DNA from: Diadema antillarum
Lineage: Eukaryota
Length of the DNA stretch: 64,000 nt
Reading direction: 5' to 3'
NCBI RefSeq assembly: GCF_040938485.1
Contig: NW_027271232.1
Location: 1,178,001-1,242,000 of the forward strand
Shown: positions 6,992 through 62,957 of the stretch, piece by piece
How the letters are laid out: every line of letters begins with the position of its first letter
Position numbering within the stretch: position 1 is the first letter of the stretch
The notes under the pieces: generated by a model
What the model was told of the DNA's origin: nothing
The model's database searches: none
Seen by the model: only the letters and a program-made list of their open reading frames with translations
Position numbers and translations under genes: made by a program

Positions 6992-8401
6992 TCAGACAGG
7001 AACATCGGAGATTGTCAAAACTGAATCGTCTATTTCCTTTCCACCAAACAAAGCCATTTTTCCCGATGTGCTAGTGGTTGATTTAAACAATTCTCCTATC
7101 GCCTTGCGGAATTCAGGATTCCGAATCGTGTAAATGACAGGATTTGCGCAAGAATTACAGAAAGCTAGGGTAACTAGAGCGGAACTTAGAGGGCTGTACA
7201 GATAGGACTCTGACAAAATACCAAGGTTGTACAGGAGATATCCCGTCTGAGGCGGTGTCCACGAGATAAGAAAAACCGCAACAACAAGGAACAAAAGCTT
7301 TAGAGCATTCTTCCTAGCCACAAGGTACTTTACTGATGGGTTTGAGTTATTGAAGTTTGAACTTTCTCCTAGCCTCCGGCGGGATTGTCGATGGAGCACC
7401 AATGCCGTGACAGCCTGGCCTACGAGCATGATGAAAGCTGGTATGAGAAATTGAACGAGGTAAAGCATAATGCCTGAGATAATCTGGACAATTCGTGACT
7501 GAAATACTTCGGTGCACTTGTCGTCCTTAGCACTAGCCACAAAGAATAGGAAAACGTTCGCTAAAAACGCGGCCAGCCATGTCATGGCAACAGCTTTGCC
7601 AACCCTCTGCCGTGTTACAAGACGCTTGAAATGAAGAGGGTGGGCAATCGCAATGTATCTCTCTATTGGAATCAATGCGAGAATGAAGATGGAGGCATCC
7701 ACTGAAATCCACATGGGCATCGATGTGTAAATAACCTTGCAGTAGACATTCCCTAGCCATGTTTCAGGAACCCAGAGTTCCGTAGGCAGTGGGACCATGA
7801 ACACTGATGTTAAGAAATCCGCAACGGCTAAAGCAGCGATCATTGCATCAGTCGACCGGCAAGTGTGACGTCTTTTGAATAACACGAGGATCACGGTCAG
7901 GTTTCCTACTATTCCCAGCATGGACATTGTTAGTTGCAGAGTCGTCACCCATGTCCATGTAACTGACTGCCACTTCCAAAGCACCTTGGGAACAGCAGAT
8001 TCTTCCTCATTTTGCTTGGTGAAATTTGGCGGACTAAAATCTGCAGTGTCCGTTATTAATTCTGTGTGATTTCCAGGGTTCATTTTAGAAATGGTAAAAT
8101 CGTTTTGTGGGAATGCTTTCATTTGGACGTTATCATTGTGCTGTCGGGTTGTTTCGATATGTGAATAGTTCTTTTCAAACTGAGTAGAGACTGAAGCATT
8201 ATCTAAACATTGGGCAAATGTCGTCAAATTGCTGTGAATGACCTCGATGGTTGAATTACATGTAGAATTAACAACCTGTGCCCTCGTAGTGGTTGAGGAA
8301 GAGTATTGAACAGCCGTAGTCCTAACCGTCTCCGCTGTGACTGTAAGACGGACCGCTTTAGTTATGATAAGGAGAACGATCATTCGAGTTGTTGACCTCA
8401 T
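6992..8401 (-). CDS. Orphan class A GPCR paralog 1 (469 aa; galanin/allatostatin-A receptor-like), single coding exon
   Basis: Seven hydrophobic helices with GIVGN (TM1), LAVADF (TM2), CK..IERY (TM3), W4.50, ECL2 Cys, FLIP (TM5), SWTP (TM6) and NSCANPVIY (TM7). It has a signal-peptide-like N-terminus and 7 N-x-S/T sequons in a ~145 aa ectodomain. Confidence 0.96.
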   Translation of the reverse strand: MRSTTRMIVLLIITKAVRLTVTAETVRTTAVQYSSSTTTRAQVVNSTCNSTIEVIHSNLTTFAQCLDNASVSTQFEKNYSHIETTRQHNDNVQMKAFPQNDFTISKMNPGNHTELITDTADFSPPNFTKQNEEESAVPKVLWKWQSVTWTWVTTLQLTMSMLGIVGNLTVILVLFKRRHTCRSTDAMIAALAVADFLTSVFMVPLPTELWVPETWLGNVYCKVIYTSMPMWISVDASIFILALIPIERYIAIAHPLHFKRLVTRQRVGKAVAMTWLAAFLANVFLFFVASAKDDKCTEVFQSRIVQIISGIMLYLVQFLIPAFIMLVGQAVTALVLHRQSRRRLGESSNFNNSNPSVKYLVARKNALKLLFLVVAVFLISWTPPQTGYLLYNLGILSESYLYSPLSSALVTLAFCNSCANPVIYTIRNPEFRKAIGELFKSTTSTSGKMALFGGKEIDDSVLTISDVPV

Positions 8402-8418
8402 TTTTCCTCTTGCTTTTC

Positions 8419-9875
8419 CTGTATTAAAGAATATAACATCATAAAATTGTAACGATGTTCATTATTCTGTTGCCAAGGCATGACAGAGGATTATCAAAAG
8501 TGCATCATAATTCAGTGTTCACTTTGACTTTGAAAACTTCGTATAATCATACAAACAGGCGAAGTTTCATCAAAACTCCGAAACAGCCATGGAATTCTAC
8601 AATGACAACTTTCTTTCTTACAGATATTATTTGAAGCCACGTATGTAAAATCAGATTATACCATGTCCATGACATACTATTCCTCCTTTGAGCCTCCTGC
8701 AAATCTGTTTATTTTCTGTCTTAAAATTGAATAATACGACACAAAGTGTAGTCTTTCCCACGATCTTATTTCATTTGCAGTAACTTTACCTTTTTAAGAC
8801 TTTGGTTACCATCTAGCAGGAAGATTTTGAGGTCATGAAGTACTCATTCCGTCCGCTCATATTTTATTATGAAGGGTAAGACCAAAATCATTAAACAAGT
8901 AAAAGTTAAGAGGTCATTCGATTTCACCTGCGATTTTCATGAAATGTTGGATTGTTTTATTTTGACTTCATTGATGTCCGCTTGAACAATTGGGGTGGCA
9001 TTACATGCCTTTTCAGCAGGAAACGAATTGATTAAAACTTATTTTAACAACCATTTATAAATGCTCTTCTTCATGAGTGATTGTAAAAGAGAGCATGCGC
9101 AAGGTCATTACGCGAGAAAATATGTCCATCTAGTGATTTCTTTTAAGACCTTGGAGACATGTGCGAATTTAATTGCCTTTGATATAGTGTCCACTTTGCC
9201 AGACTGTTTTTCCATATCCTAATGTGAGCCTCCCACAACAATTTTGGATACATCAATACTAAAGACACAGCATTTGCGATGACTAAAGATTGACCGGAGA
9301 TGGCAAAAGCTTGGCGGTCTTTGAAAGAGTCTAGACATTTGGACATGACAAATTAAAGTCTTTTACGACACTTGATAATAGGGCCTATGTCCATACAATG
9401 CATTGACAATATGGCTATAGATAGGCTATAGATCGAGGATTTAATCTAAAAAGGCATAGATTTGTATAAAATAATCCTTGCTATGACAACATCAAGCTAC
9501 GATGTCTAAATTCCTATTATATGATTGGAAAAGATAATTTACTACCGCTTCTTTAGCTACACCATAAAACTGATATGAAATTTTGAAATTGAAATTAAAA
9601 TTGAAAATGATTTAACGATCAACACTTTTCCAACGATAGTGTAGATATTTAAAGATATTAACTTGATTAACGATACTACAACCAGGTTGTAGAACGTTAT
9701 AGCAGAATTCGTGTAGAGTTGATTTGCTTGGTTAATTCCCTACTTGCAAAGAATTTTAGCGAGTATGGTGTATTTCTGAAGGTATTGAAACACGCGAATT
9801 ATAAGATAATCATCCGTTCCTTATTAGAGTTGGTATCCTACTGCAGACTTGAGCAAATCAACGAGCAAACCTTAC
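8419..9875 (-). other. Predicted 5'UTR intron of paralog 1 (GT 9874-9875 ... AG 8419-8420)
   Basis: The minus strand reads TTCTTTAATACAG|GAAAAG..ATG at the acceptor and CTTCGG|GTAAGG at the donor. Equivalent sites are conserved in all units. Confidence 0.65.
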
Positions 9876-12833: not shown

Positions 12834-14204
12834 TTAGACAGGGACATCGTAGATTGTCGAATCTGTATCACCTGTTACTTTATCGCTGAACAAAGCCGTT
12901 CTTCTCGTTGAGTTGGCCGTTGATTTGAACAAATCTCCGATCGCCTTGCGGAATTCAGGATTCCGAATCGTGTAAATGACAGGATTTGCGCAAGAATTAC
13001 AGAAGGCTAGGATAACTAGAGCTGAATTTAGTGGACTGTACAAGTAGGTTTCCGGCAGAACACGAAGATTGTACAAGAGATATCCCGTCTGCGTTGGTGT
13101 CCACGAGATGAGAAAAACCGCAACAACAAGGAACAGAATTTTGAGAACACTTTTCCTAGCCACAAGGTACTTAGCTGACGGCTTTAACTTGTTGCAATGT
13201 GAATCTTCCCCCAGCCTTCGGCGGGACTGTTGATGGAGCACCAGTGCGGTGAGAGCCTGGGCTACAAGCATGATGAACGCGGGTATGAGAAACTGAACGA
13301 GGAAAAGCATAATGCCTGAGGTAACCTGGGAAACGCTTGAATGAAATGCCGCTGTGCACTCGTCGTCCTTAGCACCAGCCACAAAAAATAAGAAAACGTT
13401 TGCCAAAAACGCGATCATCCATGTCAAGGCAACAACTTTCCCAACCCTCTGTCGTGTTACAAGACGCTTGAAATGAAGAGGGTGGGCAATCGCAATGTAT
13501 CTCTCTATTGGAATCAAGGTCAGAATGAAGATGGAGGCATCCACTGAAACCCACATGAGCATGGATGTGTAAACTACCTTGCAGTAGACATTCCCTAGCC
13601 ACGTTCCAGGAACCCTGAGTGGCGTCGGCAGGGGAACAATGAACACTGAAGTAAGGAAGTCAGCAGCGGCAAGAGCACCGATCAGTGCATCAGTTGACCG
13701 ACAATTGTGGCGCCTTTGGAATACCACCAGGATCACGGTCAGGTTTCCTACTATTCCCAGCATGGACATCGCTAGTTGTAGAATAGTCACCCATGTCCAT
13801 GTAACTGACTGCCACTTCCAAAGCGGCTGGGGTACTGCAGGCTTTTCCTCATTTTGCGCCGGAAAATTCGGCGTACCTATCTCTGCAATCTCTGTATGGA
13901 TTTCTGTTAGATATTTACGGTTGCTTTCAAAATTGTTAAAATCCCTGGGTGTTACAGTTTCGACTTTCAAATGACTCTTTTCGAACTGAGTAGAAATTGA
14001 ACCATTGTCCAAAGGTCGCATATGTGTCGTCAAATTGCCATCGATGTCTTCAATGTAATTGACAACAGGGGCACCCGTAGTGTTTGCGGTGAAATATTGA
14101 ATGGACGTAGTGGTGACCGGCTCCACTGTGACTGTATGGACCGTTTTAAATATGATAAGGAGAACAATAGTCCGAGTTGTCATTGTCCTCGTTTTTGCTC
14201 TCAT
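12834..14204 (-). CDS. Orphan class A GPCR paralog 2 (456 aa; alternative start Met at 14183)
   Basis: Same 7TM motifs as paralog 1 and an intact ORF. Acceptor TTCTTTGCAG|GAAAATG at 14209-14210; C-terminus DTDSTIYDVPV. Confidence 0.96.
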   Translation of the reverse strand: MRAKTRTMTTRTIVLLIIFKTVHTVTVEPVTTTSIQYFTANTTGAPVVNYIEDIDGNLTTHMRPLDNGSISTQFEKSHLKVETVTPRDFNNFESNRKYLTEIHTEIAEIGTPNFPAQNEEKPAVPQPLWKWQSVTWTWVTILQLAMSMLGIVGNLTVILVVFQRRHNCRSTDALIGALAAADFLTSVFIVPLPTPLRVPGTWLGNVYCKVVYTSMLMWVSVDASIFILTLIPIERYIAIAHPLHFKRLVTRQRVGKVVALTWMIAFLANVFLFFVAGAKDDECTAAFHSSVSQVTSGIMLFLVQFLIPAFIMLVAQALTALVLHQQSRRRLGEDSHCNKLKPSAKYLVARKSVLKILFLVVAVFLISWTPTQTGYLLYNLRVLPETYLYSPLNSALVILAFCNSCANPVIYTIRNPEFRKAIGDLFKSTANSTRRTALFSDKVTGDTDSTIYDVPV

Positions 14205-15551: not shown

Positions 15552-15553
<2 letters not shown>

Positions 15554-15584: not shown

Positions 15585-15585
<1 letters not shown>

Positions 15586-17166: not shown

Positions 17167-17261
17167 TAGATATAGATATATATATATATTGAAACAAGGA
17201 AGGAAAAACTGACCAGAGACAATTGTAATAATAAATAGCGAAAACTTTGAGCAAAGAAAAT

Positions 17262-17320
17262 GGGTTTTCATCGGGATTCGAACCCGAGACCTCCGGATTA
17301 CTAGACCGGTGCTGTACCGA
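17262..17320 (-). ncRNA. tRNA-Thr(AGT)-like sequence, probably a SINE head; its 5' end runs into the gap
   Basis: The minus strand reads TCGGTACAGCA CCGGT CTAGTAA TCCGG AGGTC TCGGG TTCGAAT CCCGA. This gives a B box, a perfect T-arm and an AGT anticodon loop with one stem mismatch. Confidence 0.6.
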
Positions 17321-17453
17321 NNNNNNNNNNNNNNNNNNNNNNNNNNNNNNNNNNNNNNNNNNNNNNNNNNNNNNNNNNNNNNNNNNNNNNNNNNNNNNNN
17401 NNNNNNNNNNNNNNNNNNNNNNNNNNNNNNNNNNNNNNNNNNNNNNNNNNNNN
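17321..17453. other. Assembly gap (133 N)
   Basis: Run of N. Confidence 1.
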
Positions 17454-22199: not shown

Positions 22200-25100
22200 A
22201 TGGTAACTAATGGAGAGAGCAGTGACTTAATGACCAGTCGTATGGGCATGCATTATTTTGGTGATGATAATGAGATCTCTGATTCCGATGTTATAAAAAG
22301 GTTAAACAAACAAACTCCAGAATTTGACTTGTCTTATGATGACAATGATACATTATTGCGAGGTACAGGTTCCGACTATATTTCCCCTCAGGACATATGT
22401 ACACGTTATTTTTTCAAGATGGAAAACAACTTTTCTATTTTTCATTTCAATATACGAAGTTTGTATAAGAAACTTGATCAACTGAAGATATTTTTGAATT
22501 TACACAATGTGGATTTTTCTGTTATAGGTTTGTGCGAAACGTGGCTGTCTGACGTGTCATCTCCCCTAGTTCATTTGGATGGATATTCTCTTGTGTTTAA
22601 TAATAGAGTAAATAAACATGGAGGGGGTGTCGCTCTTTATGTTCAGAAAGGATTCAATTTTGATTTGATTCAGAATTTATGTCATATGACTGAAGATTTT
22701 GAAAGCATATTTATTGAAATCGACATACCAGCTGGAAAGAATATTTTGATTGGTGAGATTTATAGACCACCAAACTGTAATCATACTGCTTTTTTGATGT
22801 ACTGAATTCCGTATTGAATTCTGAGTCTTTGCATAATAAACATTGTTTTTTAATGGGGGATTTCAATCTTGATTTACTGCAGTATCACGAAAAGCCCTGC
22901 TGCCAGGATTTTGTGGACACTATGTTTTCATATGCTTTTACGCCGTGTATAACTAAACCTACCAGAATATTTGATTCAGCGTATACAATGATAATATATT
23001 CACTAATATTCATTATCCAACTGATCAAGGTATACAGTAATAGTTTCGGATATGTCTGATCATTTCCCAGTGCTTGCTTCTAGTCCATTTATACTAAATC
23101 GCTTTAAGCCTGCAACTTGGGAAATGAATTCTACAGCTCGTGTAATGTCTGAACAAAATATAATAAGATTTAAGGAAAGTCTGTTAAATATTGATTGGTC
23201 AGTGGTTCTCAATGCGAATGAGCCTAATGATGCATATGATAAGTTTGTTGATCTGATCGCTCCTCTTTTCTCTTTTCATTTTCCGATAAGATCACAATCT
23301 AGATCAAATTATAAAAAGATACCACGATGCCCCTGGATATCGAAATCTTTGTTGAGGTCTGTCAATTGGAAAAATAAGCTCTTTTATATATTCAAGTCTC
23401 AAAAAACTGATGCTGCTAAAAGCAAATATACTAGTTATCGTAATGTTCTTACTTCTGTGTTGCGTGAGGCAAAAAAGAAATATTTTTCTTCACTGTTTCT
23501 TCTCCATGAGAAGGACATTAAATCCACGTGGAAAGTTATTGATAATGTTCTTCAGAAGAAACGAAATAAATCGAATATCCATAAGATTTGTGTAATTGAC
23601 ATCGAGTTAAGAGATGATAATGAAATCTCTGAAGCGTTTAATTTATATTTTGTGAAGGTTAGATCTAATTCAGCTGATGTTATTCCGAAAACGGATATAC
23701 CTTTTTCTACGTATTCAAGTCATCGCAATAATCAATCTTTGTTTTTTATGCCTGTATTAGAATCCGAAATTGTTGACATTGTAAATAATCTTAAAGCCAA
23801 AAAAGTACTGGTTATGATGGAATTTCTAATTATCTTCTGAAATATGTTGTACATGAGATTGTTGTACCTCTCGCCCATATATTTAATTTGTCATTACTGA
23901 ACGGTATAGTGCCTACTAGGATGAAAATCACTAAAGTTATCCCGATATATAAAAAGGGCGGAGAGGACGAACTGGGAAATTATCGACCAATATCGTTATT
24001 TAACTTCTTTTTCTAAATTACTTGAAAAGATTGTGTACACACGTGTATTCCGATTCTTAAATGACTGTAATGTAATAGATGAAAATCAATTTGGATTTCG
24101 TAAAAAGCATTCCACAATTCATGCTAATTTACTCATGATAGAGAAAATTATCAAAGCGATCGATGCCAAGTGTCACACAGTAGGTATCTTTCTTGACTAC
24201 TCCATCAAGGCCTTTGACACAATCACCCATGAAATATCATTATAAAAATTACAACACTATGGGATTCGTGGGAGGGCCTTGGAGTGGTTTAGAAGTTACC
24301 TTACTGGAAGAACTCAATTTGTTAGTTTGAATGGCCATGTGTCCAGCTCACAGCCTATAACTTGTGGGGTACCGCAAGGATCCCTTTTAGGTCCGTTATT
24401 GTTTATTCTTTATACGAATGACTTTCGCAGTTCGTCCTCTCTGCTCTATTTTCTACTTTTTGCCGATGACACCAGCATTTTTTATTCAAATCAAAACCCT
24501 CATGTTTTACTGAATACCATAAATACTGAATTAAAATCAGTATCTAAGTGGATCCAGGCTAATAAATTGTCATTGAATTTGACCAAGACAAAATTTATGG
24601 TTTTTAGCAATATAATCTATATTTTACCGGGTAAGTTGGTTGTAAACGACGTAGAATTGAACCAGGTGGAATATATAAAATTCCTTGGTCTTTATATTGA
24701 TTGTAAGTTGACATGGAAAGTTCATGTTGATTCTTTGCGTAAATTACTATCAAAAAATGTTGGTGTTATATATAAGTTAAAACAGTTTTTCCCTAAACAT
24801 GTTCTGCATTCATTGTATTCTACTCTATTTTTGCCTTATATAGGTTATGGAATCCTGGCATATAGAAACTGCTGTAAAACTAGACTTAATTCTTTATTAT
24901 TGATACAGAAAAGAGCTATACGGATAATTAACTTCGCCACATTTTTCGAACACACTAATGTCTTATTCTTTTCCAGTAGAACACTGAAGATCCAGGATTT
25001 ATATCATTTTAATATCGGGTCATTTATGTATCAATTAAACTCAGGTGGTCTCCCTGATGTGTTTTCTTCGATGTTTGTAAAAAAAAACTTAAGTTCATTC

Positions 25101-25775
25101 TTACCCTACTAGACAAAAAGATTCTTTTCATCTTTCTCCTGTACGAACCGTATCTGCTTTAAAAACAATAACCACTACAGAACCTAAATTTTGTAATGAG
25201 TTGGATAGAGAAATAATCCAATCTCAGTCTCTATATTCATTTAAGCATAAACTTAAACGAGTTTTTCTGAATTCATATTTATAGCTATTCTTCAATCCTC
25301 CTCGACATTCTCTGTTCATTACTGACATTATCGATTATGTAACATGTGCCTCGCTCGTGATTTCTGTATTATCTCCTGAACTTCCTTTGTACACATTTGG
25401 TATCTCTGCTATTGTACACTGCATCTGACTTGTACCTCGCTCGGGTGATCACGCAACTCTCAAGAAGTCTGTGCCGCGGACATTGTTTTCTTTGTTTTTT
25501 TATTTTTCTTTTTACTTTTTGGCGTTTATATTTCTCCAATTCACAAATTGTCATTCCTTTAATTACATAACCAAGTAAGAAATAATCTCACATCCGCATC
25601 TGGGAATCTACACCCTACAAGCAATGCTTCTATGTAGATTCCTCATATTTCACAGGTTTTATCTTTTTATAAGCTGTACTTGACAATTCATCCAGGCTTT
25701 TGTATTGTGATGTTTATGTTTTATGTATTTGTTGAAATGTGGAATATGGAACAATAAAAAACAAAAAAACAAACA
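22200..25775 (+). mobile_element. Near-complete but pseudogenised LINE ORF2 (APE + RT), Crack/Daphne-like member of the CR1/L2 group, with 3'UTR
   Basis: APE motifs: HFNIRSL, GLCETWL, GGGVALYV, IYRPPN, MGDFNLDLL, PTRI, SDHFPV. RT motifs: YRPISL, QFGFRKKHST, GVPQGSLLGPLLFILY, FADDT. The ORF is split by several stops and frameshifts and ends in an AATAAAAAACAAAAAAACAAAC tail. Confidence 0.92.
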
Positions 25776-34320: not shown

Positions 34321-35733
34321 TTAGACATCGACATGGTAGATTGTTGAATCTGTATTCCCTATTGTTTTTTCGCTGAACAAAGCCGCTTTTCCTGATGAGC
34401 TAGTGGGTGATTTGAACAATTCTACTATCGCTTTGCGGAATTCAGGATTCCGAATCGTGTAAATTACAGGATTTGCGCAAGAATTGCAGAAGGCTAGGAC
34501 ATTTAGAGCAGTGAAAAGGGGGCCGTATAAATAGGACGCTGACAGGACACGAAGGTTGTACAATAGATAAACCGTGTGTGTTGGTGTCCACGAAATGAGA
34601 TAAACGCCAACAACAAGGAACAGAATCTTGAGAACATTTTTCCTAGCCACAAGATACTTCGCTGACGGGTTCGAATTATCGCATTTAGAATCTTCTCCTA
34701 TCCTCCGGCGGGACTGTCGATGGAGCATCAGTGCGGTCAGAATCTGGGCTACAAGCATGATGACAGCTGGTATTAGAAACTGAACGAGGAAAAGCACACA
34801 GCCGGTGATGATCTGGGCAGTCCATGACTGAAACACCTCAGTGCACCTGCCGCCCTTGGCACCAGCCACAAACAATAAGTACAAGTTTACCAAAAATGCC
34901 ACCAGCCATGACATGGCAACAGCTTTGGCAACTCTCTGCCGTGTTACAAGACGCTTGAAATGAAGAGGGTGGACAATCGCAATGTATCTTTCTATAGGAA
35001 TCAAGGTTAGAATGAAGACGGAAGCACCCACTGAAACCCACATGAGCAATGATGTGTAAACAACCTTGCAGTAGACATCCCCTAACCATGTTCCAGGAAC
35101 CTTCAGTGGTCTCGGCAGCGGAACCATGAACACTGATGTGAAGAAATCCGCAACGGCCAGAGCACCAATCAGTGCATCAGTTGACCGACAAGCGTGGCGC
35201 CTTTGGAACAACACCAGGATCACTGTCAGGTTTCCCACTATTCCTAGTATGGACATTGCTAGTTGCGGAATCGTCACCCATGTCCATGCAACTGACTGCC
35301 ACTTCCAAATCGGCCTAGGGCTTGTAGGCTCTTCCTCATTTTGCGCAGTAAAATTCGGCGTACCAATCTCTACTGTCTCTGTATAGATTTCTGTCATAAT
35401 TTCATGGCTGATTTCTGATATATTAAAATTCCTTTCTAGAAATGTCTTGATTCGAACAATTTTGTCTTGGCGTGGGGTTGCTCCAATATATAAGTAGCTC
35501 TTGACGATCTCAGTAGAATCTGAAACATTGCCTAAAGGCTGCCAGTGTGTCGTCAAATTGCTGTCGATGACTTCAATGTCTGAATGACTTTTAAGGCTGA
35601 CGACTAATGTCCCGACAGTGTTTAGGCCAGAATTTTGTACAGCTGTAGTGCTGACTGGTCGTGCTGTGACTGTAAGATGAACCGTTCCAGATATGACAAG
35701 AAGAACGATCGTCACGTTTATCATTATCCTCAT
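34321..35733 (-). CDS. Orphan class A GPCR paralog 3 (470 aa from the aligned ATG at 35733)
   Basis: Intact 7TM ORF. The ORF-track extension to 35772 crosses the conserved acceptor TTCTTTACAG at 35755-35756, so MRIMINV is the likely start. Confidence 0.96.
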   Translation of the reverse strand: MRIMINVTIVLLVISGTVHLTVTARPVSTTAVQNSGLNTVGTLVVSLKSHSDIEVIDSNLTTHWQPLGNVSDSTEIVKSYLYIGATPRQDKIVRIKTFLERNFNISEISHEIMTEIYTETVEIGTPNFTAQNEEEPTSPRPIWKWQSVAWTWVTIPQLAMSILGIVGNLTVILVLFQRRHACRSTDALIGALAVADFFTSVFMVPLPRPLKVPGTWLGDVYCKVVYTSLLMWVSVGASVFILTLIPIERYIAIVHPLHFKRLVTRQRVAKAVAMSWLVAFLVNLYLLFVAGAKGGRCTEVFQSWTAQIITGCVLFLVQFLIPAVIMLVAQILTALMLHRQSRRRIGEDSKCDNSNPSAKYLVARKNVLKILFLVVGVYLISWTPTHTVYLLYNLRVLSASYLYGPLFTALNVLAFCNSCANPVIYTIRNPEFRKAIVELFKSPTSSSGKAALFSEKTIGNTDSTIYHVDV

Positions 35734-49044: not shown

Positions 49045-50454
49045 TTAGACAGGGACATTGTAGATTGTCGAATCTGTATCACCTGTTATTTTTTCGCTGA
49101 ACAAAGCCGTTTTCCGCGTTGTGCTACTGGTTGATTTGAACAATTCTCCTATCGCTTTACGGAATTCTGGATTCCGAATCGTGTAAATGACAGGATTTGC
49201 GCAAGAATTACAGAAAGCTAGGACAACAAGAGCGAAATAGATAGGGCTGTACAAATACGACTCTGGCAGGACACGAAGGTTGTACAAAAGATATCCTATC
49301 TGTGTTGGTGTCCAAGACATGAGGAAAACGGCGACAACAAGGAACAAAATCTTGAGAACACTTTTTCTAGCCACAAGGTACTTAGCTGTCGGGTTTGAGT
49401 AATTGCAATTTAAATCTTCTCCTAACTTCCGACGGGATTGTCGATGGAGTACCAGTGCAGTGAGAGCCTGAGCTACAAGCATGACGGAACAAGGTATTAG
49501 AAACTCAATGAGGAAAACCATACAGCCTGTCATAATTTGGGAAAATTGTGAGTGAAACTTGTCAGTGCATGTGCCGCCCTTGGCCCTAGCCACAAATAAT
49601 GTGAAAAGGTTTAACAAAAACGCGGTAAGCCATGCCATGGCAACAGCGTTGAAAACTCTCTGCCGTGTTACAAGCCGCTTGAAATGAAGAGGGTGGGCAA
49701 TCGCTATGTATCTCTCTAGTGGAATCAATGCCAGAATGAAGATGGAGGCATCCACTGAAACCCACATGAGCATTGACGTGTAAACTACCTTGCAGTAGAT
49801 ATCTCCTAGCCATGTTTCAGGAACCTTCAGTGCCCTAGGCAGCGGAACCAAGAACACTGACGTGAAGAAATCCGCAGCGGCAAGAGCACCGATCAGTGCA
49901 TCAGTCGACCGGCAAGTGTGGCGTCTTTGGAATAACACCAGGATCACTGTCAGGTTTCCCACTATCCCAAGCATGGACATTGCCAGTTGTGGAATCGTCA
50001 CCCATGTCCATGCAACTGACTGCCATTTCCAACGCGGCTGGAGGACGTCGGGTTCTTCTTGTTTTTGTATGGTCAAATTCACCGTACTAACGACCGCGGT
50101 CTCCGTATTGATTTCAGTCTGATTTTCAAGGTTGATTTGCGACATGTTAAGATCCCTTTGTGGAAATATCTTGATTTGACTGTTTTTGTTGTCTTTTCCA
50201 GCTGTTTCGGTACGTAGATAGCTCTTTTCAAGCTGAGTAGAAACAGAAACATTGTCTAAAGGTTTGGCAATTGTCGTCACATCGCTGGGAAGGACCTCGA
50301 TGTCTGAATGACGTTTAAAATTGACAACAGATGTCCCCGTAGTGCTTGAGGGAGCTAGGTACTGAACAGCCGTAGTGGTGACCGGTGTGGCTGTAATATG
50401 GACCGTTGTAGATGTGATTAGGAGAGCTATCGTCCAAGCTGTCAGTATCCTCAT
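49045..50454 (-). CDS. Orphan class A GPCR paralog 5 (469 aa)
   Basis: Intact 7TM ORF. Acceptor TTCTTTACAG at 50471-50472; C-terminus DTDSTIYNVPV. Confidence 0.96.
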   Translation of the reverse strand: MRILTAWTIALLITSTTVHITATPVTTTAVQYLAPSSTTGTSVVNFKRHSDIEVLPSDVTTIAKPLDNVSVSTQLEKSYLRTETAGKDNKNSQIKIFPQRDLNMSQINLENQTEINTETAVVSTVNLTIQKQEEPDVLQPRWKWQSVAWTWVTIPQLAMSMLGIVGNLTVILVLFQRRHTCRSTDALIGALAAADFFTSVFLVPLPRALKVPETWLGDIYCKVVYTSMLMWVSVDASIFILALIPLERYIAIAHPLHFKRLVTRQRVFNAVAMAWLTAFLLNLFTLFVARAKGGTCTDKFHSQFSQIMTGCMVFLIEFLIPCSVMLVAQALTALVLHRQSRRKLGEDLNCNYSNPTAKYLVARKSVLKILFLVVAVFLMSWTPTQIGYLLYNLRVLPESYLYSPIYFALVVLAFCNSCANPVIYTIRNPEFRKAIGELFKSTSSTTRKTALFSEKITGDTDSTIYNVPV

Positions 50455-50994
50455 GTTTGTCCTTCTTTTGCTGTAAAGAACGTGATAACAACTAATCGTA
50501 AAATTGATACTTGGAGCTGATTCGTCTTTAGTGATGTCAGAGGATTATTGAAGTACATTAGGACCACGATTCGAAGTTAACTTTGACTTTGAAAACATGG
50601 TACAGGTAAAATCATACAAATAGATAAAATCTCATCAAAATCGAAAACGAGATAGCCATGGGTTTTTACAATGACAGTTTTTAGAAAACAGTAACATTAC
50701 GTGAAACCACGTATACGTAAAACCAAGTATGCAAATACATTAAACTTATTTTATCGTGTTATCAATCTTCTTTTGACCAACTGATGAATTACCACCAAAT
50801 TTTCTTCTTCTTCTTTTTTTTTTTTTGGGGGGGGGGTTGACATCATAAGACGTATATACTGCCACCTTTCACACACTACTGTTTATTTGCTGTAATATTC
50901 ATGAGTCGTAACTCTTGGAAGCTTGGTAGGTGATATACGATATTTTAAATATTTAAATTAGTTACCGACAATCGGGAGAGTTTTGAGGTTTTAA

Positions 50995-51375
50995 AGGGAT
51001 CGTATAGTTTTGGTTGAGACCTAATTTCAGGTTTCTAAAATTTTTTGGTGAGATAATGAGAAACCTCTTATGAAATATAAAAGAGCATATAATTACATGA
51101 GGAAATCAATGTTCATTTGATGAAAATTGGTTTTGAAATGGCTGAGATATCCAAAACAGAGTGATTCTTATAAAGTGTGGGACCGACCTTTTTTGCGATC
51201 GCTTTGTTTTACCTTATTTTTGGATGCTTCAGTCATTCCAAAACCGATTTTCATCAAATAAACTTTGAATTTCTCTTAAAATGGTATGCTCTGTACTATT
51301 TCATAAGTGTTTTCTTGGTATCCCGCAAAAAGCTAAAGGCCCAATTCTCATCTCCACCAATACTGTACCATCCCT
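50995..51375. mobile_element. Complete Kolobok-type MITE (381 bp) with TTAA target duplication, in the intron of paralog 5
   Basis: TTAA|AGGGATCGTATAGTTTTGGTTGAGA ... TCTCCACCAATACTGTACCATCCCT|TTAA. The empty site GAGGTT TTAA AGTATTCC is present in copy B (TTAA 56349-56352). Confidence 0.92.
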
Positions 51376-52478
51376 TTAAAGTATTCCTTTCATCTACTAG
51401 TATTTGGACAATTAGGTTACGACCAATATATATATTTTTTTCCATGAAAACGATTAAGATTTGAGCTTTCACTCAATTTCAACAGCGAGTCTTGAAGTTT
51501 TGGATTATTTCATTTACGCTTCTCAGTGATATCTGCTGGAACAGACGAAGTGGCATTGCATGTTGACTAAATCTACATCGTTTTTTAAGACAATACATAT
51601 TGATCCAACTTAGTCTCTGCCAAAATGCTCACCAGTCGTAGAGATTGCAAGAGAGCAATCAAATGGTCTTTAAGTGAAACAATTCATCCCATCAGTTAAA
51701 ATAAGGACGCACCTAGAAGGCTTTCAGAGACTTCTTCAAAATGCAAATGTACTAAACTTAGCCTCTGAATTACGGACTTTGCCTACCAGCTCTCTGGTAA
51801 AAATTTACAACCAATCTGTCCTACATGTTTGTCTTGACGGTTGATTCATCGATTGAAATTACTAACTGAAATTGTCAGTTATTCAATTATTCAGGAGAAT
51901 CAAAGGCTGTGGCTCGCATTACTTCTGCAACTCTCCTTTCACGACTGCCTTTAAAGTAGACTACCATTCACGAGATATTTTGCCATGTCAATATACGACT
52001 TTTTAACAACTTACATATCATGTCAATACTGCAAGAAAAAAAAGAACATTGGTTATTACTATATATGACTATAACCGAAATTATGGAATAGAGACTTCAT
52101 CTTCAAAGAAGGGGGTTCGTTAAGAATCCCTTTTATTGTAACATTATGTGATATGAAAAGATAATTCATTATCATTTTTTTTTCGTGTACACCTTAAAAC
52201 TGAAATAAGAATTGAAATCAGTTATAGAAATCTTTAGTCTTGAGAATTGACACTGCAACCAGGTTGAAGAAGGTTGCAACAGAGATGATTTGCAGCTGAC
52301 ATATTTTCTTCAAAAGTATCAATAGTATAGAGTGTTTTTGTTTGTTGAGGAAATAAAGGTATTTATGAAATATTCCAGGCACCTGCTACTGTAGGCGAAC
52401 AGTTGTTTATAAGGAATCAAAAACTATGCTTGAGCCTGTATTCTTTTGCACGCCTGAGGAAATTATGTGGCAAAACTT

Positions 52479-54433: not shown

Positions 54434-55828
54434 TTACAAAATGGACCTTGGATCACCTGTTATTTTTTCGCTGAACAACGCCGTTTTCCCCGATGTGCTA
54501 CTGGTTGATTTGAACAATTCTCCTATCGCTTTACGGAATTCTGGATTCCGAATCGTGTAAATGACAGGATTTGCGCAAGAATTACAGAAAGCTAGGACAA
54601 CAAGAGTGAAATAAATAGGGCTGTACAAATAGGACTCTGGCAGAACACGAAGGTTGTACAAAAGATATGCTATCTGTGTTGGTGTCCAAGACATGAGGAA
54701 AACGACGACAACAAGGAACAAAATCTTGAGAACATTTTTTCTAGCCACAAGGTACTTAGCTGTCAGGTTTGAGTTATTGCAGTTTAAATCTTCTCCTAAT
54801 TTCCGACGTGATTGTCGATGGAGCACCAGCGCGGTCAGAACCTGGGCTACAAGCATGACGAAGGCAGGTATGAGAAACTGAACGAGGAAAAGCATAATGC
54901 CTGAGGTAACCTGGGAAAGCCGTGATTGAAATGCCGCATTACACTTTTCGTCCTTCGTACCAGCGACAAAGAATAAGAAAAAGTTTACCATGAATGCCAT
55001 CATCCATGTCACGACAACAGCCTTGCCAACCCTCTGCCGTGTTACAAGACGCTTAAAATGAAGAGGGTGGGCAATCGCAATGTATCTCTCTATTGGAATT
55101 AAGGCCAGACTGAAGATGGAGGCATCCACGGAAACCCACATGAGCATTGACGTGTAAACCACCTTGCAGTAGATACTCCCTAGCCATGTTTCAGGAACTC
55201 TCAGCGGCCTAGGAAGCGGAACCAAGAACGCTGACGTGAAGAAATCCGCGACGGCCAGAGCACCGATCAGTGCATCAGTCGACCGGCAAGTGTGGCGCCT
55301 TTGAAATAACACCAGGATCACAATCAGGTTTCCCACTATTCCAAGCATGGACATTGCTAGCTGCGGAATCGTTACCCATGTCCATGTAACTGACTGCCAT
55401 TTCCAACGCGGCTGGAGGACGTCGGGTTCTTCTTCTTTTTGTGCCGTGAAACTCACCGTGCTTATGACCGCGGTCTCCGTATTAATTTCAGTCTGATTTT
55501 CAAGGTTGATTTGCGACATGTTAAAATAGCTTTGAGGAAATATCTTGATTTGACTGTTTTTGTTGTCTTTTCCCGTTGTTTCGAAAGGCAGATACCTCTT
55601 TTGAAAATGAGTAGAAACAGAAACATTTTCTAAAGGTCGGGCGATTGTCGTCAAATTGCTGAGAAGGACCTCGATGTCTGGTTGACGTTTAAAATTGACA
55701 TCCGGTGTCCCCGTAGTGCTTGAGGGAGCTAGGTAATGAACAGCCGTAGTGGTGACCGGTGTGGCTGTAATATGGACGGTTGTAGATGTGATTAGGAGAG
55801 CTATCGTCCAAGCTGTCAGTATCGTCAT
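54434..55828 (-). CDS. Orphan class A GPCR paralog 6 (464 aa) with a chimeric C-terminus (..ITGD-PRSIL)
   Basis: Intact 7TM ORF with an acceptor at 55845-55846. The last five codons and the stop come from spacer sequence homologous to ~59905-59928. Confidence 0.94.
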   Translation of the reverse strand: MTILTAWTIALLITSTTVHITATPVTTTAVHYLAPSSTTGTPDVNFKRQPDIEVLLSNLTTIARPLENVSVSTHFQKRYLPFETTGKDNKNSQIKIFPQSYFNMSQINLENQTEINTETAVISTVSFTAQKEEEPDVLQPRWKWQSVTWTWVTIPQLAMSMLGIVGNLIVILVLFQRRHTCRSTDALIGALAVADFFTSAFLVPLPRPLRVPETWLGSIYCKVVYTSMLMWVSVDASIFSLALIPIERYIAIAHPLHFKRLVTRQRVGKAVVVTWMMAFMVNFFLFFVAGTKDEKCNAAFQSRLSQVTSGIMLFLVQFLIPAFVMLVAQVLTALVLHRQSRRKLGEDLNCNNSNLTAKYLVARKNVLKILFLVVVVFLMSWTPTQIAYLLYNLRVLPESYLYSPIYFTLVVLAFCNSCANPVIYTIRNPEFRKAIGELFKSTSSTSGKTALFSEKITGDPRSIL

Positions 55829-56398: not shown

Positions 56399-56438
<40 letters not shown>

Positions 56439-59804: not shown

Positions 59805-61550
59805 TATAACAATCAAAGCTAAATACAACGGAGGGGGGGGGGATCGGCAGAGAGATATGACGTCCATTTGCATATTCTGTCAACCTATCGTCAACACCTA
59901 CCAAGTTTGCTCACAAGATGAAACTTACGTTTTCAACAAGAAGATAAGTATGTTAAAAAAATGACCCCAGTTTAGTCTCAAACAGGGCACGGAGGGCACG
60001 GGAGGGGCATCCCTGGATTTGTCATTAACAATCTTGAAACACACACACAGCACTAACTTAGCTCTATCCCTTCTCGCACCAGTATGGTGGGCCATAGCCT
60101 GTATCATAGGCTAGAGCATCCGTGAATATGAATATCGTTGGTTGTAATTGTGGTTTTTGTTCAGATGTTTCTTCCGTTTTTGTATTTTTTCGTACCTTAA
60201 GTATCTTAGCCTTATGATGTTGTACAATTCGTATTTCTTTCTTTGCATTGCATTCTGCATACATCTAATCTGTGAAGTTTGCCGTTACAACCGATCTCGT
60301 TTTGTCCTTATGCTTATACACTCCTGGCATTTGCTCATTAATATCGAAGAAAAGCAAGTTGCTACTTGAAAAGAAACCATGTATGTATACTATTTCACGC
60401 ATAGATTCAAGTAAATGCAAAACTGTTCCATGCGTAGTATATAATTTGTCTTTATATTGTTTCATTTCACTTTCAATGAGCTTCTACTATGATATGATAA
60501 CAATATTTCTGTTTAGCTAAGGTCGAACCAGTGCAATGTACAGGGAATCCCATTTCTTTTTGTAGATACACATGTAGCAAGACTACGATGTGATATTTAT
60601 GGTATTGTAAGTAATACACGAATGTACTCTTCTACTCGTGTTTATTATCGTCCTTTCACTCGCACTCTGGCTGCCCACGCATTCACACACACCTACACCA
60701 GGCTCATCCATACACTCAATACATTTATACGCATACTTTGCAAAATTCATTCTCAGTGTTTCACTCAACCATACAAACGGTTGTAAAGAAATACATAGTG
60801 GCAGAAGACAACACATACTTACATAACACATACTTAAAAAAACATAAAATTCTTAGGGTAGGAGAATACGTATATAAATGTTGTTTCATATACTATATTA
60901 AACATAGATAAGCTCGGTATATGCAAAATACTTACAATGATTTCAGGGATCTATCACGTTTTCGTTATCAAAGTTTACTGCAGGCCAAGAAAAAGTTATA
61001 TTGAAGTGACATGATATATACTTTTAAAACATTTTTATGGTTCACTTTTGTGCAATTTGCTTACTTGAATATATTTCAAACAATAAATCACTATCTAGCA
61101 CTTTCCAAAACGCACTTTAATATTATTGCTTCATTGCTGCAAAAAAACACACGATTAAATTATCATAAAGTTAAACTCTGCAAAATGTATCAATATGAAT
61201 ACAAAATAAAACATTTGAACAAATTACCGTGCATTGAGAAACTGTTGTTTCAGGAATTAATTCATTTTGCCGATTAAGCGGATGTGAATATTTTATTACG
61301 GGAGGGACGGAAATACTGGTGGCACAACAACATTCTGACAACAAAACGAATCACCACCACCAATAATATCAAACTTAAAGTAACCAAAAAAACTTTATTC
61401 TTCTATCGCCTCAAACGGCGTCGTCCCAGTCTCAGTCCATCTTCTTTCCAACGTGGACCGAACAGGCCATACCAGGCCAGACCATGCGTATTCATGACAA
61501 TTCGTTTACAATTCTACCCATTACAATGTATTTGAAAAGCCGAAAAATGC

Positions 61551-62957
61551 TTAGACATCGACACTGAAAATTGTTGAATCTGTTTCACCTGTTATTTTTT
61601 CGCTGAACAAAGCTGTTCTTCTCGATGTCCTAGTAGTTGATTTGAACAACTCTCCTATCGCTTGGCGGAATTCAGGATTCCGAATTGTGTAAATGACAGG
61701 ATTTGCGCAAGAATTGCAGAAGGCTAGGACAACCAAAACAGAACTTAGAGGGCTGTACAAATAAGAAGTTGGCAAAAATCGAAAGTTGTACAAGAGATAT
61801 GTCGTCTGTGTTGGTGCCCAAGAGATGAGGAAAACGACGACAACAAGGAATAGAATCTTGAGAACACTTTTCCTTGCCACGAGGTACCTAGCTGACGGCT
61901 TTGAGTTTTTACAGTTGTAATCTTCTCCCAGCCATTGGCGGGATTGTCGATGTAGGACCAGTGCGGTGAGAGCCTGGGCTACAAGCATGATGACAGCTGG
62001 TATCAGAAACTGAACAAGGTAAAGCATACAACCTGAGGTAACCTGTGAAAGCCGTGACTGAAATGTCACAGCGCACTTGTCGTTCTTTGCACCAACCACA
62101 AATAATTCGAATACATTCGCAAGAAACGCAACCAGCCATGTCACAGCAACAACTCTGCCAACCCTTTGCCGTGTTACAAGACGCTTGAAATGAAGAGGGT
62201 GGGCAATCACAATGTATCTCTCTATTGGAATTAAGGTCAGAGTGAATATGGAGGCATCCACTGAAACCCACATTAACATGGACGTGTAAACCACCTTGCA
62301 GTAGATATTCCCTAGCCATGTTCCAGGAACCCTAAGCGGCGTAGGCAGCGGAATCATGAACACTGACGTGAGGAAATCCGCAACGGCCAGAGCACCGATC
62401 AATGTATCTGTCGACCTGCAAGTGTGGCGCCTTTGGAATAACACCAGGATCACGGTCAAGTTTCCCACTATTCCCAGCACAGACATTGCTAGTTGCGGAA
62501 TTGTCACCCATGTCCACGTAACTGACTGCCACTTCCAAAGCGGTAGAGAATCCTCATTTTGCCCGGTTAAATTCGGCGTACTAATGTCCGCAGTCTCTAT
62601 GTAGATTTCTGTCTGATTTTCATGGTTTATTTCAATCACATTAAGATCCGTTCGTGGAAATGTTTTGATTTGAATGATTTTGTCGTACTGTTGAGTTGTT
62701 TCGTTATGCAGGCCTAAGGATCTCATTTCGAACCGATTAGAAACTGAATCATTTTCTAATGGTTGGGCATGTGTCGTCAAATTGCCGTGGATGGCATCGG
62801 TGTTTGAATTTCTTTCAAAATGGACAAGCAGTGCCGCCGTAGTATTTGGGGTAGCATATTGAGGAGCTGTAGTTCTGACCGGTTGTGCTGTAACTGAAGG
62901 ATGAACCTTTGAAGATATGATGAAGAGAATGATCGTCCAAGTTTTCAGTACCCTCAT
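61551..62957 (-). CDS. Orphan class A GPCR paralog 7 (468 aa from ATG 62957)
   Basis: Intact 7TM ORF. The acceptor TTTTTTATAG at 62974-62975 precedes MRVLK. Its intron-homologous sequence runs to the window end, so the promoter is predicted off-window. Confidence 0.96.
   Translation of the reverse strand: MRVLKTWTIILFIISSKVHPSVTAQPVRTTAPQYATPNTTAALLVHFERNSNTDAIHGNLTTHAQPLENDSVSNRFEMRSLGLHNETTQQYDKIIQIKTFPRTDLNVIEINHENQTEIYIETADISTPNLTGQNEDSLPLWKWQSVTWTWVTIPQLAMSVLGIVGNLTVILVLFQRRHTCRSTDTLIGALAVADFLTSVFMIPLPTPLRVPGTWLGNIYCKVVYTSMLMWVSVDASIFTLTLIPIERYIVIAHPLHFKRLVTRQRVGRVVAVTWLVAFLANVFELFVVGAKNDKCAVTFQSRLSQVTSGCMLYLVQFLIPAVIMLVAQALTALVLHRQSRQWLGEDYNCKNSKPSARYLVARKSVLKILFLVVVVFLISWAPTQTTYLLYNFRFLPTSYLYSPLSSVLVVLAFCNSCANPVIYTIRNPEFRQAIGELFKSTTRTSRRTALFSEKITGETDSTIFSVDV

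What the first reader, a model, noticed from the sequence alone, without database searches (positions are those of the whole stretch)
6992..62957. Seven-gene tandem array of intact orphan GPCRs with a signal peptide and a fast-evolving mucin-like ectodomain
Seen: seven same-strand intact ORFs in repeated units, with none pseudogenised despite heavy TE load. Each begins with a signal-peptide-like stretch (e.g. MRILTAWTIALLITSTTVHITA) and a ~135-150 aa S/T- and sequon-rich ectodomain that diverges far more than TM1-3 and TM6-7. Established knowledge: most class A GPCRs lack cleavable signal peptides, and lineage-specific, intron-poor tandem rhodopsin-type expansions in echinoderms are candidate chemoreceptors. 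Inference: this is a lineage-specific sensory (or immune/pheromone) receptor subfamily, not a galanin/AstA ortholog.
Basis: partly seen in the sequence, partly recalled or inferred. Interest (0 to 1): 0.7.

Follow-up and report, generated by a model that had tools for sequence, protein, structure and literature searches.

The report
Sea urchin orphan receptor gene array
The window holds seven intact genes from a roughly 42-gene tandem family of orphan G-protein-coupled receptors in the sea urchin Diadema antillarum; these are probably chemical sensors of a kind already known in sea urchins, and their signal peptide and long outer tail are missing from public gene models.

Summary
Seven intact, single-exon, minus-strand rhodopsin-type GPCR genes lie in units 5.4-21.5 kb apart. 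The N gap (17321-17453) is intergenic and touches none of them.

- **Architecture:** each gene has a signal-peptide-like start, a 101-119 aa acidic outer tail predicted to be disordered, an invariant WKWQSVxWTW motif, and a complete 7TM core.
- **Tail evolution:** the tail evolves 3-5 times faster than the core but is clearly coding. It has 0 stops in 974 codons, omega about 0.5, and stays open in D. setosum orthologs.
- **"Mucin-like" is overstated:** S+T is 19-26%, Pro 3-9%, and there are no repeats. Only a ~20-aa S/T/P patch qualifies.
- **"Seven genes" is a window effect:** the genome is the unpurged D. antillarum assembly. The array has 22 loci on this contig and about 42 per haplotype, all on one strand. 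About a fifth carry a stop or frameshift.
- **Relationships:** the array is a Diadema-only clade with 1:1 D. setosum orthologs. Its similarity to known receptors (CCK, galanin, opioid, TAAR) is flat, and residue 3.32 is Met. It is therefore neither a TAAR nor a galanin/AstA ortholog.
- **Classification:** it fits the known "surreal-GPCR" kind of echinoid expansion. A sensory role is inferred only, because no RNA data could be reached.

The scan has noted other orphan GPCR arrays in this genome. My look-ups showed none of this family.

The parts
6992..8401 (-). Gene 1: intact single-exon GPCR CDS, 469 aa
   Evidence: ORF. Pfam 7tm_1 E 5.9e-37. The core is 99% identical to D. antillarum P0013.
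12834..14204 (-). Gene 2: intact GPCR CDS, 456 aa, with the shortest ectodomain (12-aa deletion)
   Evidence: 309 of 311 residues are identical to the D. antillarum model P0006, which starts at the Met inside TM1.
34321..35733 (-). Gene 3: intact GPCR CDS counted from the conserved Met (470 aa). The mechanical ORF runs on to 35772.
   Evidence: The core is identical to P0010.
42373..43782 (-). Gene 4: intact GPCR CDS from the conserved Met (469 aa). The TTG-started ORF to 43941 is not credited. The ectodomain has no N-glycosylation sequon.
49045..50454 (-). Gene 5: intact GPCR CDS, 469 aa, used as the reference copy
   Evidence: AlphaFold2 model: 7TM pLDDT about 90, residues 12-136 below 50.
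50389..50454 (-). Gene 5 signal-peptide-like segment (residues 1-22, MRILTAWTIALLITSTTVHITA)
   Evidence: It has a basic n-region, a 16-aa uncharged run, and I-T-A before T-P. It is modelled as a lone helix at residues 2-16.
50032..50388 (-). Gene 5 ectodomain (residues 23-141): acidic, enriched in S/T and sequons, predicted disordered
   Evidence: No stop in frame, against 15 stops in the other two sense frames.
49138..50031 (-). Gene 5 Trp-rich juxtamembrane motif plus 7TM core and helix 8 (residues 142-439)
50471..50480 (-). ttctttacag: a conserved polypyrimidine-YAG, 16 nt before the ATG of gene 5. It is present 4-25 nt before the first ATG in all seven genes and is a candidate 3' splice site of a non-coding first exon.
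   Evidence: Upstream alignment and sequence. Inferred; no RNA evidence.
54434..55828 (-). Gene 6: intact GPCR CDS, 464 aa, with a shorter variant C-terminus (…DPRSIL)
   Evidence: The D. setosum ortholog is 97% identical and has the same ending.
61551..62957 (-). Gene 7: intact GPCR CDS from the conserved Met (468 aa). The mechanical ORF runs on to 63017.
   Evidence: The D. setosum ortholog is open over all 488 aligned aa at 90.6% identity.
17321..17453 (.). Assembly gap, intergenic between genes 2 and 3. It was not filled or looked up.
22200..25112 (+). Non-LTR retrotransposon remnant (endonuclease and reverse-transcriptase ORFs) that enlarges the gene 2 to gene 3 spacer
   Evidence: Pfam Exo_endo_phos E 5e-5 (23.6 bits, just under the family's 24.5-bit curated cutoff) and RVT_1 E 8e-17.
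50867..51457 (.). Very high-copy interspersed repeat between genes 5 and 6
   Evidence: Summed contig depth is 10^5-10^6 against about 20-60 in the flanks.

Best explanation
The seven genes are part of a large tandem array of class A GPCR genes in Diadema antillarum. The array has 22 loci over 166 kb on this contig and about 42 per haplotype, all on one strand. It arose by serial unequal-crossover duplication before D. antillarum and D. setosum split, and it has been kept since then as one-to-one orthologs.

Each protein is made from one coding exon, probably preceded by a short non-coding exon. A cleavable signal peptide would drive a 100-120 aa acidic, N-glycosylated, disordered tail across the ER membrane. 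An invariant Trp-rich strand (WKWQSVxWTW) ties that tail to the top of a complete, signalling-competent 7TM core resembling peptide receptors. The core keeps N1.50, D2.50, ERY, the TM3-ECL2 cysteines, W6.48/P6.50, NPxxY and helix 8.

The intracellular loops are almost identical between paralogs, so all copies should use the same transducer. The paralogs differ in the tail, ECL2, TM4-5 and the C-tail. Ligand specificity is therefore probably set at the outer face by tail plus ECL2, as in two-site peptide and chemokine receptors.

The most likely role is external chemoreception, as proposed for the echinoid "surreal-GPCR" expansions.

Shown: gene structure, architecture, array size, orthology, and selection pattern. 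Inferred: signal-peptide cleavage, glycosylation, the 5' exon, the ligand-binding mode, and the sensory role.
For: - **Gene integrity and family:**
- **Array extent and strand:** one search gives 91 scored matches on C344, C519 and C10, all minus strand. Searches give 22 loci at C344:1162494-1328443, with none in the 22 kb before or the 24 kb after.
- **Genome identity:** the assembly is D. antillarum with both haplotypes retained. Contig length 2338953 equals that of P0007 and P0010, the cores are 99-100% identical, and the papers agree.
- **Coding status of the tail:** 0 stops in 974 codons against 66 and 52 in the other sense frames. Paralog dN/dS is 0.52. The D. setosum orthologs of genes 7 and 6 are adjacent, in the same order, and open over their full length, with tail omega 0.64 and 0.45 against core 0.13 and 0.12.
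- **Signal-peptide features:** present in 18 of the 22 loci on this contig.
- **Structure:** a confident 7TM core with an ECL2 hairpin and a disordered tail. The nearest solved folds are peptide receptors: orexin, CCK1R, NTSR1, kisspeptin and opioid.
- **Conserved versus variable parts:** ICL1 is 90%, ICL2 97% and H8 92% identical, against tail 47%, ECL2 52% and TM4 65%.
- **Lineage-specific clade with 1:1 orthologs:**
- **Flat similarity to known receptors:**
- **Known precedent:** echinoid tandem GPCR expansions are expressed in tube feet and pedicellariae (PMC7042368, PMC10855541).
Against: - There is no expression evidence. No RNA run holding the stretch could be found, and the three runs laid are genomic DNA.
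[quoted passage not shown] This hints at little or no transcript support in those tissues.
- Paralog cores are 80% identical, and orthologs are stable 1:1 with core omega about 0.12. That is more conservative than the classic birth-and-death pattern of chemoreceptor families.
- The nearest folds are endogenous peptide receptors.
- Signal-peptide cleavage and glycosylation were not tested by any predictor or experiment.
- The "Diadema-only" clade rests on the 60 best word-search hits, so camarodont members below about 45% identity could have been missed.
Confidence: 0.6

Rival explanations
1. The array is an expanded set of receptors for endogenous peptides or hormones, used for internal neuro-endocrine signalling rather than for sensing external chemicals.
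For: - The closest sequences and folds are peptide receptors: CCK-A, galanin, opioid, QRFP, orexin and kisspeptin.
- The model has an ECL2 beta-hairpin.
- The core is under strong purifying selection, and orthology across Diadema species is 1:1.
- Variation is concentrated in the N-tail and ECL2, as in peptide receptors.
Against: - About 42 tandem paralogs per haplotype, plus sister clades, exceed any known single-peptide system.
- No solved receptor family stands out, since scores fall within 120-142 bits.
- The architecture, with an intronless CDS in a same-strand array, is that of the echinoid expansions already interpreted as chemosensory.
Confidence: 0.2
2. The receptors act in immunity or microbe sensing on coelomocytes or epithelia. 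Their fast-evolving glycosylated tail would then be shaped by pathogens.
For: - Echinoids are known for expanded innate-immune receptor families.
- The tail evolves 3-5 times faster than the core.
Against: - Tail omega is 0.45-0.64, which is relaxed rather than above 1.
- The NCBI annotation used coelomic-fluid RNA-seq yet still produced truncated 311-aa models. This is weak, indirect evidence against strong coelomocyte expression.
- Nothing in the sequence links the genes to immunity.
Confidence: 0.1
3. The N-terminal extension is not translated. The real proteins would be the 311-aa public models that start at the Met inside TM1, and the upstream open frame would be 5' UTR.
For: Most NCBI models for D. 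antillarum and D. setosum start at MSMLGIVGN. None of the full-length forms is in the protein collection.
Against: - There are 0 stops in 974 in-frame codons across seven diverged copies, against 52-66 in the other frames.
- dS exceeds dN.
- The frame is also open in D. setosum orthologs.
- The signal-peptide-plus-tail architecture is present in 18 of the 22 loci on this contig, and in 16 of those 18 residue -1 of the proposed cleavage site is small (A, G or T).
- A 311-aa start would leave only about 8 residues of TM1 before N1.50.
- Two D. setosum models (P0001, P0005) do include the extension.
Confidence: 0.03
4. Many copies are recently duplicated, functionally redundant or silent genes on their way to decay. 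Their intactness would reflect youth or gene conversion rather than function.
For: - About a fifth of array loci carry a stop, frameshift or truncation.
- There are signs of conversion. The 3' 300 nt of genes 5 and 6 are 97% identical while the proteins are 83% identical overall.
- dS is uneven between domains.
Against: - Paralog dS is 0.4-0.7.
- Each tested window gene has its own D. setosum ortholog, with core omega about 0.12. The copies are therefore old and individually constrained.
Confidence: 0.07

Closest known systems
Sea urchin 'surreal-GPCRs' (rapidly expanded rhodopsin-type lineages of Strongylocentrotus purpuratus, groups A-F; Raible et al. 2006 as cited in PMC7042368, PMC5442662 and PMC10855541) and the OR-like arrays of Acanthaster planci
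   Same: - An echinoderm-specific, large tandem expansion of class A GPCRs.
- A single coding exon.
- Clustered paralogs most similar to each other.
- Misleading automatic names.
- S. purpuratus and L. pictus relatives at about 40-43% identity.
   Different: - This is a Diadema-lineage clade. It could not be assigned to a surreal group, because no labelled S. purpuratus sequences were on hand.
- The array is strictly one-stranded and is stable as 1:1 orthologs between two Diadema species.
- The signal peptide, long disordered tail and Trp-rich motif are not mentioned in the main text of the two papers searched for those terms, PMC7042368 and PMC5442662 (0 hits for 'signal peptide').
- Expression in sensory appendages is known for surreal-GPCRs but untested here.
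Peptide-binding class A receptors of the beta/gamma branches (CCK-A, galanin, opioid, orexin, kisspeptin, QRFP receptors)
   Same: - These are the best sequence-profile and fold matches: 21-26% identity and TM-score about 0.75-0.83 on the target.
- Both have an ECL2 hairpin.
- In both, variation sits at the N-tail and ECL2.
   Different: - There is no preferred partner and no 1:1 orthology.
- This family has a two-residue insertion at the top of TM3.
- Gln replaces Tyr at 5.58 in all 43 family members aligned.
- It has about 42 tandem copies and a signal peptide with a >100-aa tail.
Trace amine-associated receptors (the public name of most of these genes)
   Same: Both are class A GPCRs with a single-exon CDS in tandem clusters and a chemosensory use. 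TAAR9 is among the top PDB hits.
   Different: Position 3.32 is Met, not the amine-binding Asp. TAAR9 scores no better than opioid or galanin receptors. TAARs have short N-termini without a signal peptide.
Class A GPCRs with cleavable signal peptides and long N-tails (for example endothelin B, protease-activated and glycoprotein-hormone receptors; from established knowledge)
   Same: A long N-tail is paired with an N-terminal signal peptide. This is the usual solution for translocating tails longer than about 60-80 aa.
   Different: There is no sequence relationship. The tail here has no folded domain and no detectable homolog outside the array.

Membership tests
Class A (rhodopsin-type) GPCR, Pfam PF00001 | Full-length match to the 7tm_1 profile above the gathering score | tested here: met
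   All seven score 128-142 bits against a cutoff of 30.5, covering profile positions 1-260 of 260.
Class A (rhodopsin-type) GPCR, Pfam PF00001 | Microswitch residues: N1.50, D2.50, E/DRY, C3.25-ECL2 Cys pair, W6.48/P6.50, NPxxY, helix 8 F-R | tested here: met
   GN, AADF, ERY, YCK and KC, SWTP, NPVIY and EFR are invariant in the seven genes and mostly so in 43 family members. Exception: 5.58 is Gln, not Tyr.
Trace amine-associated / aminergic receptors | Asp at 3.32 that binds the amine | tested here: not met
   Counting back from R3.50 in the profile alignment gives Met at 3.32. The only TM3 acid is at 3.37.
Galanin / allatostatin-A receptor orthologs | One-to-one (or few-to-one) orthology, with clearly best similarity to that receptor type | tested here: not met
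   There are about 42 paralogs per haplotype. GalR1 scores 132 bits against CCK-A 142, mu-opioid 131 and TAAR9 131. A full reference-receptor phylogeny could not be built with the sequences on hand.
Echinoid 'surreal-GPCR' type expansions | Lineage-specific rapid expansion of rhodopsin-type GPCRs in tandem clusters | tested here: met
   The array forms a Diadema-only clade with 100% support. It has 22 loci in 166 kb on this contig and 91 scored matches on three contigs.
Echinoid 'surreal-GPCR' type expansions | Membership of one of the named S. purpuratus groups A-F | not tested
   No group-labelled S. purpuratus sequences could be obtained. The accessions of the two S. purpuratus relatives were not found in the supplements of PMC7042368.
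Echinoid 'surreal-GPCR' type expansions | Expression in tube feet, pedicellariae or other sensory appendages | not testable with these tools
   No RNA run holds the stretch, and the runs laid were genomic DNA.
Proteins with a cleavable N-terminal signal peptide | Tripartite n/h/c organisation with small residues at -3 and -1, at the first Met | tested here: met
   By inspection only. The start is M-R/K, followed by an uncharged run of 8-19 aa (KD8 2.3-3.9). Among 18 array copies, residue -1 is A in 12, T in 3, G in 1, V in 1 and K in 1.
Proteins with a cleavable N-terminal signal peptide | Predicted or observed cleavage | not testable with these tools
   No SignalP or DeepTMHMM was available. 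AlphaFold2 only shows a detached helix at residues 2-16.
Mucin-like domains | Pro/Thr/Ser-rich composition (typically above 40%), often in tandem repeats | tested here: not met
   S+T is 19-26% and Pro 3-9%, with no internal repeats. Only the first ~20 mature residues reach 8-12 S/T/P per 20. The tail is acidic, enriched in sequons and predicted disordered.

The most novel reading that the evidence does not exclude
This family may be an external chemoreceptor class that recognises macromolecular waterborne cues (peptides, proteins or glycans from conspecifics, food algae or microbes). It would use a chemokine-receptor-like two-site mode: a signal-peptide-delivered, glycosylated, fast-evolving disordered tail plus ECL2, on an almost invariant signalling core. 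The repertoire of about 42 genes would be kept as stable one-to-one orthologs rather than turning over by birth and death.
Probability: 0.2. Interest if true: 0.6.

Novelty: new member of a known kind. Interest (0 to 1): 0.35.

Why it matters
Diadema antillarum is a keystone reef grazer whose recovery depends on settlement, aggregation and spawning, all of which are guided by chemical cues. No chemoreceptor has been characterised in it.

This work delimits a large, mostly intact receptor family and corrects its gene models. Public models omit the signal peptide, the whole outer tail and part of TM1. Public names (TAAR9-like, galanin- or allatostatin-A-receptor-like) are misleading.

It also shows which parts vary between copies, which gives concrete constructs for expression and deorphanisation. 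In general terms it adds one more lineage-specific echinoid GPCR expansion. The one less usual feature is a signal peptide and long disordered tail on a class A candidate chemoreceptor.

Tried and rejected
- **RNA evidence.** The one run search returned three runs of unknown kind. Laying them on 48700-54600 showed even coverage of the intergenic DNA at 5-6% divergence, so they are genomic DNA of a relative. No transcript, splice joint or start could be read.
- **Homologs of the tail alone.** The word search restricted to residues 1-141 gave nothing at E <= 0.01. The ESM Atlas gave no usable hit. Both blanks are weak, because public models mostly lack this region.
- **Exact look-up of full-length forms.** Ten forms were looked up and none is in the collection.
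- **Surreal-GPCR group assignment.** The S. purpuratus accessions were absent from the supplements of PMC7042368. The Raible 2006 paper is not held in the library.
- **tRNA scan of the window.** No gene was found, so the tRNA-like sequence left of the gap is a repeat fragment.
- **C-mannosylation motif.** I considered whether the Trp-rich motif fits the consensus (W-x-x-W). The spacing does not fit, so I rejected it.
- **Eighth TM helix.** I considered whether the hydrophobic start is an extra TM. Uncharged runs of 8-19 aa, interrupted by K/R/H, argue for a signal peptide.
- **Large profile search of 1.84 billion representatives.** I did not run it. It carries no names or taxonomy and would not decide any open point.
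- **Constraints observed.** The N gap was neither filled nor looked up. 

Full report
**Observation**

The window carries seven minus-strand ORFs of 456-522 aa. Each matches the Pfam rhodopsin-family profile over its full length, with E 6e-37 to 2.5e-41. A tblastn of one copy against the window finds exactly these seven and no fragments. The repeat finder recovers seven units spaced 5842, 21487, 8052, 6672, 5374 and 7132 bases apart.

The assembly gap at 17321-17453 lies in the long spacer between genes 2 and 3. It is 3.1 kb from the nearest receptor codon and is flanked by a tRNA-like repeat fragment and a LINE reverse-transcriptase fragment. It therefore breaks no frame. Only the spacer length depends on it, and the same spacer measures 21.4 kb on the other haplotype against 21.5 kb here.

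**Start codon and N-terminal region**

The seven proteins align from one conserved Met. The upstream extensions of the mechanical ORFs in genes 3, 4 and 7, one of which starts with TTG, are not conserved as protein. In all seven genes the first ATG after a conserved polypyrimidine-YAG, 4-25 nt upstream, is this Met. The coding sequence is therefore one exon. The YAG suggests a short non-coding first exon, but this is inference.

From the Met there is a basic residue and then an uncharged run of 8-19 residues. A c-region follows that is mostly V-T-A before Q/E/T-P. After that come 101-119 residues that are acidic (except in gene 4), with 19-26% S+T against 14-17% in the core and 3-9% Pro. This stretch holds 28 N-X-S/T sequons against 13.6 expected from shuffles, although gene 4 has none.

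Only the first ~20 mature residues are truly S/T/P-rich, and there are no repeats. "Mucin-like" is therefore too strong; "glycosylated disordered tail" fits better. AlphaFold2 with a 43-sequence alignment gives pLDDT about 90 for the 7TM core and below 50 for residues 12-136. It also models a lone helix at 2-16, a short strand at the invariant WKWQ motif, and an ECL2 hairpin.

**Is the tail coding?**

Yes. Across the seven copies the N-terminal 974 codons contain no stop, while the other two sense frames contain 66 and 52. Nei-Gojobori estimates between paralogs give tail dN 0.36, dS 0.71 and omega 0.52, against core dN 0.11, dS 0.42 and omega 0.26.

In D. setosum the orthologs of genes 7 and 6 lie next to each other in the same order. 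Both are open over their full length, signal peptide and tail included, at 90.6% and 97% identity. Ortholog omega is 0.64 and 0.45 in the tail against 0.13 and 0.12 in the core, and the C-tail has no amino-acid change.

| Region | aa identity between paralogs |
|---|---|
| Tail | 47% |
| TM1-3, TM6, TM7 | 82-89% |
| TM4 | 65% |
| ECL2 | 52% |
| TM5 | 77% |
| ICL1 | 90% |
| ICL2 | 97% |
| Helix 8 | 92% |

**Where it comes from and how big it is**

The window is G000:C344:1178001-1242000. The contig length of 2,338,953 equals that recorded for D. antillarum proteins P0007 and P0010. The core of gene 3 is identical to P0010, and gene 2 matches P0006 at 309 of 311 residues. The assembly size and contig number match the published D. 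antillarum hifiasm v0.4 assembly, which retains both haplotypes.

A whole-genome search gives 91 scored matches, all on the minus strand, on contigs C344, C519 and C10. C10 is collinear with C344 followed by C519, with alleles about 97% identical, so it is the other haplotype.

I fetched C344:1140001-1352000 and found 22 loci between 1162494 and 1328443, with none in the 22 kb before or the 24 kb after. Two loci are frameshifted, two have a stop and one is N-terminally truncated. Counting the close subfamily on both haplotypes gives about 42 loci each, roughly a fifth of them damaged. At least 4-5 more divergent relatives follow.

"Seven genes, none pseudogenised" is thus a property of the window, not of the locus. 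The signal-peptide-plus-tail architecture is present in 18 of the 22 C344 loci.

**Relationships**

- The nearest proteins are D. setosum and D. antillarum models named TAAR9-like, followed by galanin-, allatostatin-A-, CCK- and QRFP-receptor-like models at about 50%. L. pictus and S. purpuratus proteins follow at 40-43%.
- Most public models of the array genes are 311 aa and start at the Met inside TM1. None of the full-length forms of the seven genes is in the protein collection.
- In a maximum-likelihood tree the array forms a clade of 32 rows with 100% support that holds only Diadema sequences. Several window genes pair with their own D. setosum ortholog, and the camarodont homologs sit in a different clade.
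- Against solved structures the family profile scores almost equally for CCK-A (142 bits) and for galanin R1, mu-opioid, TAAR9 and QRFP receptors (130-132 bits).
- The model's best fold matches are orexin, CCK1, neurotensin, kisspeptin and opioid receptors at 21-26% identity.
- Position 3.32 is Met, so the receptors are not aminergic or TAAR-like. There is a two-residue insertion at the top of TM3.

**Mechanism**

The core keeps all the usual class A switches except Tyr5.58, which is Gln in all 43 aligned family members. The proteins should therefore fold and signal as GPCRs.

The near-identity of the intracellular loops implies a common transducer. The concentration of differences in the tail, ECL2, TM4-5 and the C-tail implies that copies differ in what they bind and perhaps in trafficking.

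A tail of more than 100 residues on a class A receptor normally needs a signal peptide to cross the membrane. That is established knowledge, and it fits what is seen here. The peptide-receptor-like fold with an ECL2 hairpin, plus a variable tail, suggests two-site recognition of peptide-like or larger ligands.

Array organisation, lineage restriction and the precedent of surreal-GPCRs expressed in tube feet and pedicellariae (PMC7042368, PMC5442662, PMC10855541) make external chemoreception the best guess. This step is inference.

**What could not be done**

No RNA run holding the stretch could be found. The three runs returned are genomic DNA of a relative about 94-95% alike, so they say nothing about expression, splicing or starts.

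[quoted passage not shown] This is a weak hint of low expression in those tissues. No signal-peptide predictor was available. Assignment to a named surreal group failed for lack of labelled sequences.

**Verdict**

It belongs to a known kind, the echinoid lineage-specific tandem GPCR expansions.

The points worth keeping are:
- the true size and stability of the array;
- the unannotated signal peptide and disordered glycosylated tail, with its invariant Trp-rich anchor;
- the misleading public names.

Other orphan GPCR arrays of this genome were noted by the scan.

Noticed in passing
window 49079-49378 versus 54453-54752: The 3' 300 nt of the gene 5 and gene 6 coding sequences are 96-97% identical, while the two proteins are 83% identical overall. 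Between these two genes dS is lower in the tail (0.13) than in the core (0.26). This mosaic pattern suggests gene conversion or a staggered duplication history.
   Followed up: partly
window 54434-54460 (gene 6 C-terminus); L016:17900-17945: Gene 6 ends in …DPRSIL instead of the family's …DTDSTIYxV[DP]V. The D. setosum ortholog has the same ending, so the variant C-terminus is old and retained.
   Followed up: partly
all seven genes, last residues (for example window 49045-49060): Six of the seven proteins end in V-[DP]-V, preceded by S-T-I-[YF]. The C-tail shows no amino-acid change between D. antillarum and D. setosum orthologs but differs between paralogs (63% identity). It may be a PDZ-ligand or export motif; this was not tested.
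   Followed up: no
residue 329 of gene 5 (about window 49468-49470) and equivalents: Gln replaces the conserved Tyr5.58 activation switch in all 43 aligned family members, including S. purpuratus and L. pictus. Pro at 3.47 beside ERY is specific to the array. An Asp sits at 3.37 in six of the seven genes, with Gly in gene 3.
   Followed up: partly
G000:C10:119946-121019 and C10:169745-170728: The other haplotype carries two extra partial receptor copies, one before the gene 1 allele and one between the gene 4 and gene 5 alleles. Neither has a counterpart on C344, so copy number varies between haplotypes.
   Followed up: no
window 50867-51457: A very high-copy interspersed repeat. Summed contig depth is 10^5-10^6 in three DNA runs, with many internal rearrangement joints.
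   Followed up: no
window 17230-17320: A tRNA-like sequence (reverse strand) is cut off by the assembly gap. ARAGORN calls no tRNA gene, so it is probably a tRNA-derived SINE fragment.
   Followed up: partly
window 8402-8801, 14205-14604, 35734-36133, 43783-44182, 50455-50854, 55829-56228, 62958-63357: The 400 nt upstream of each gene still align between paralogs (mean column identity 55%) and share blocks. The duplicated unit therefore includes the putative promoter and first-exon region.
   Followed up: partly
P0016 (S. purpuratus XP_011683245.1, 580 aa): This public model looks like two receptor copies fused head to tail, with a second TM2-TM7 after residue ~300. It is probably a mis-joined tandem pair, and I left it out of the tree.
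   Followed up: no
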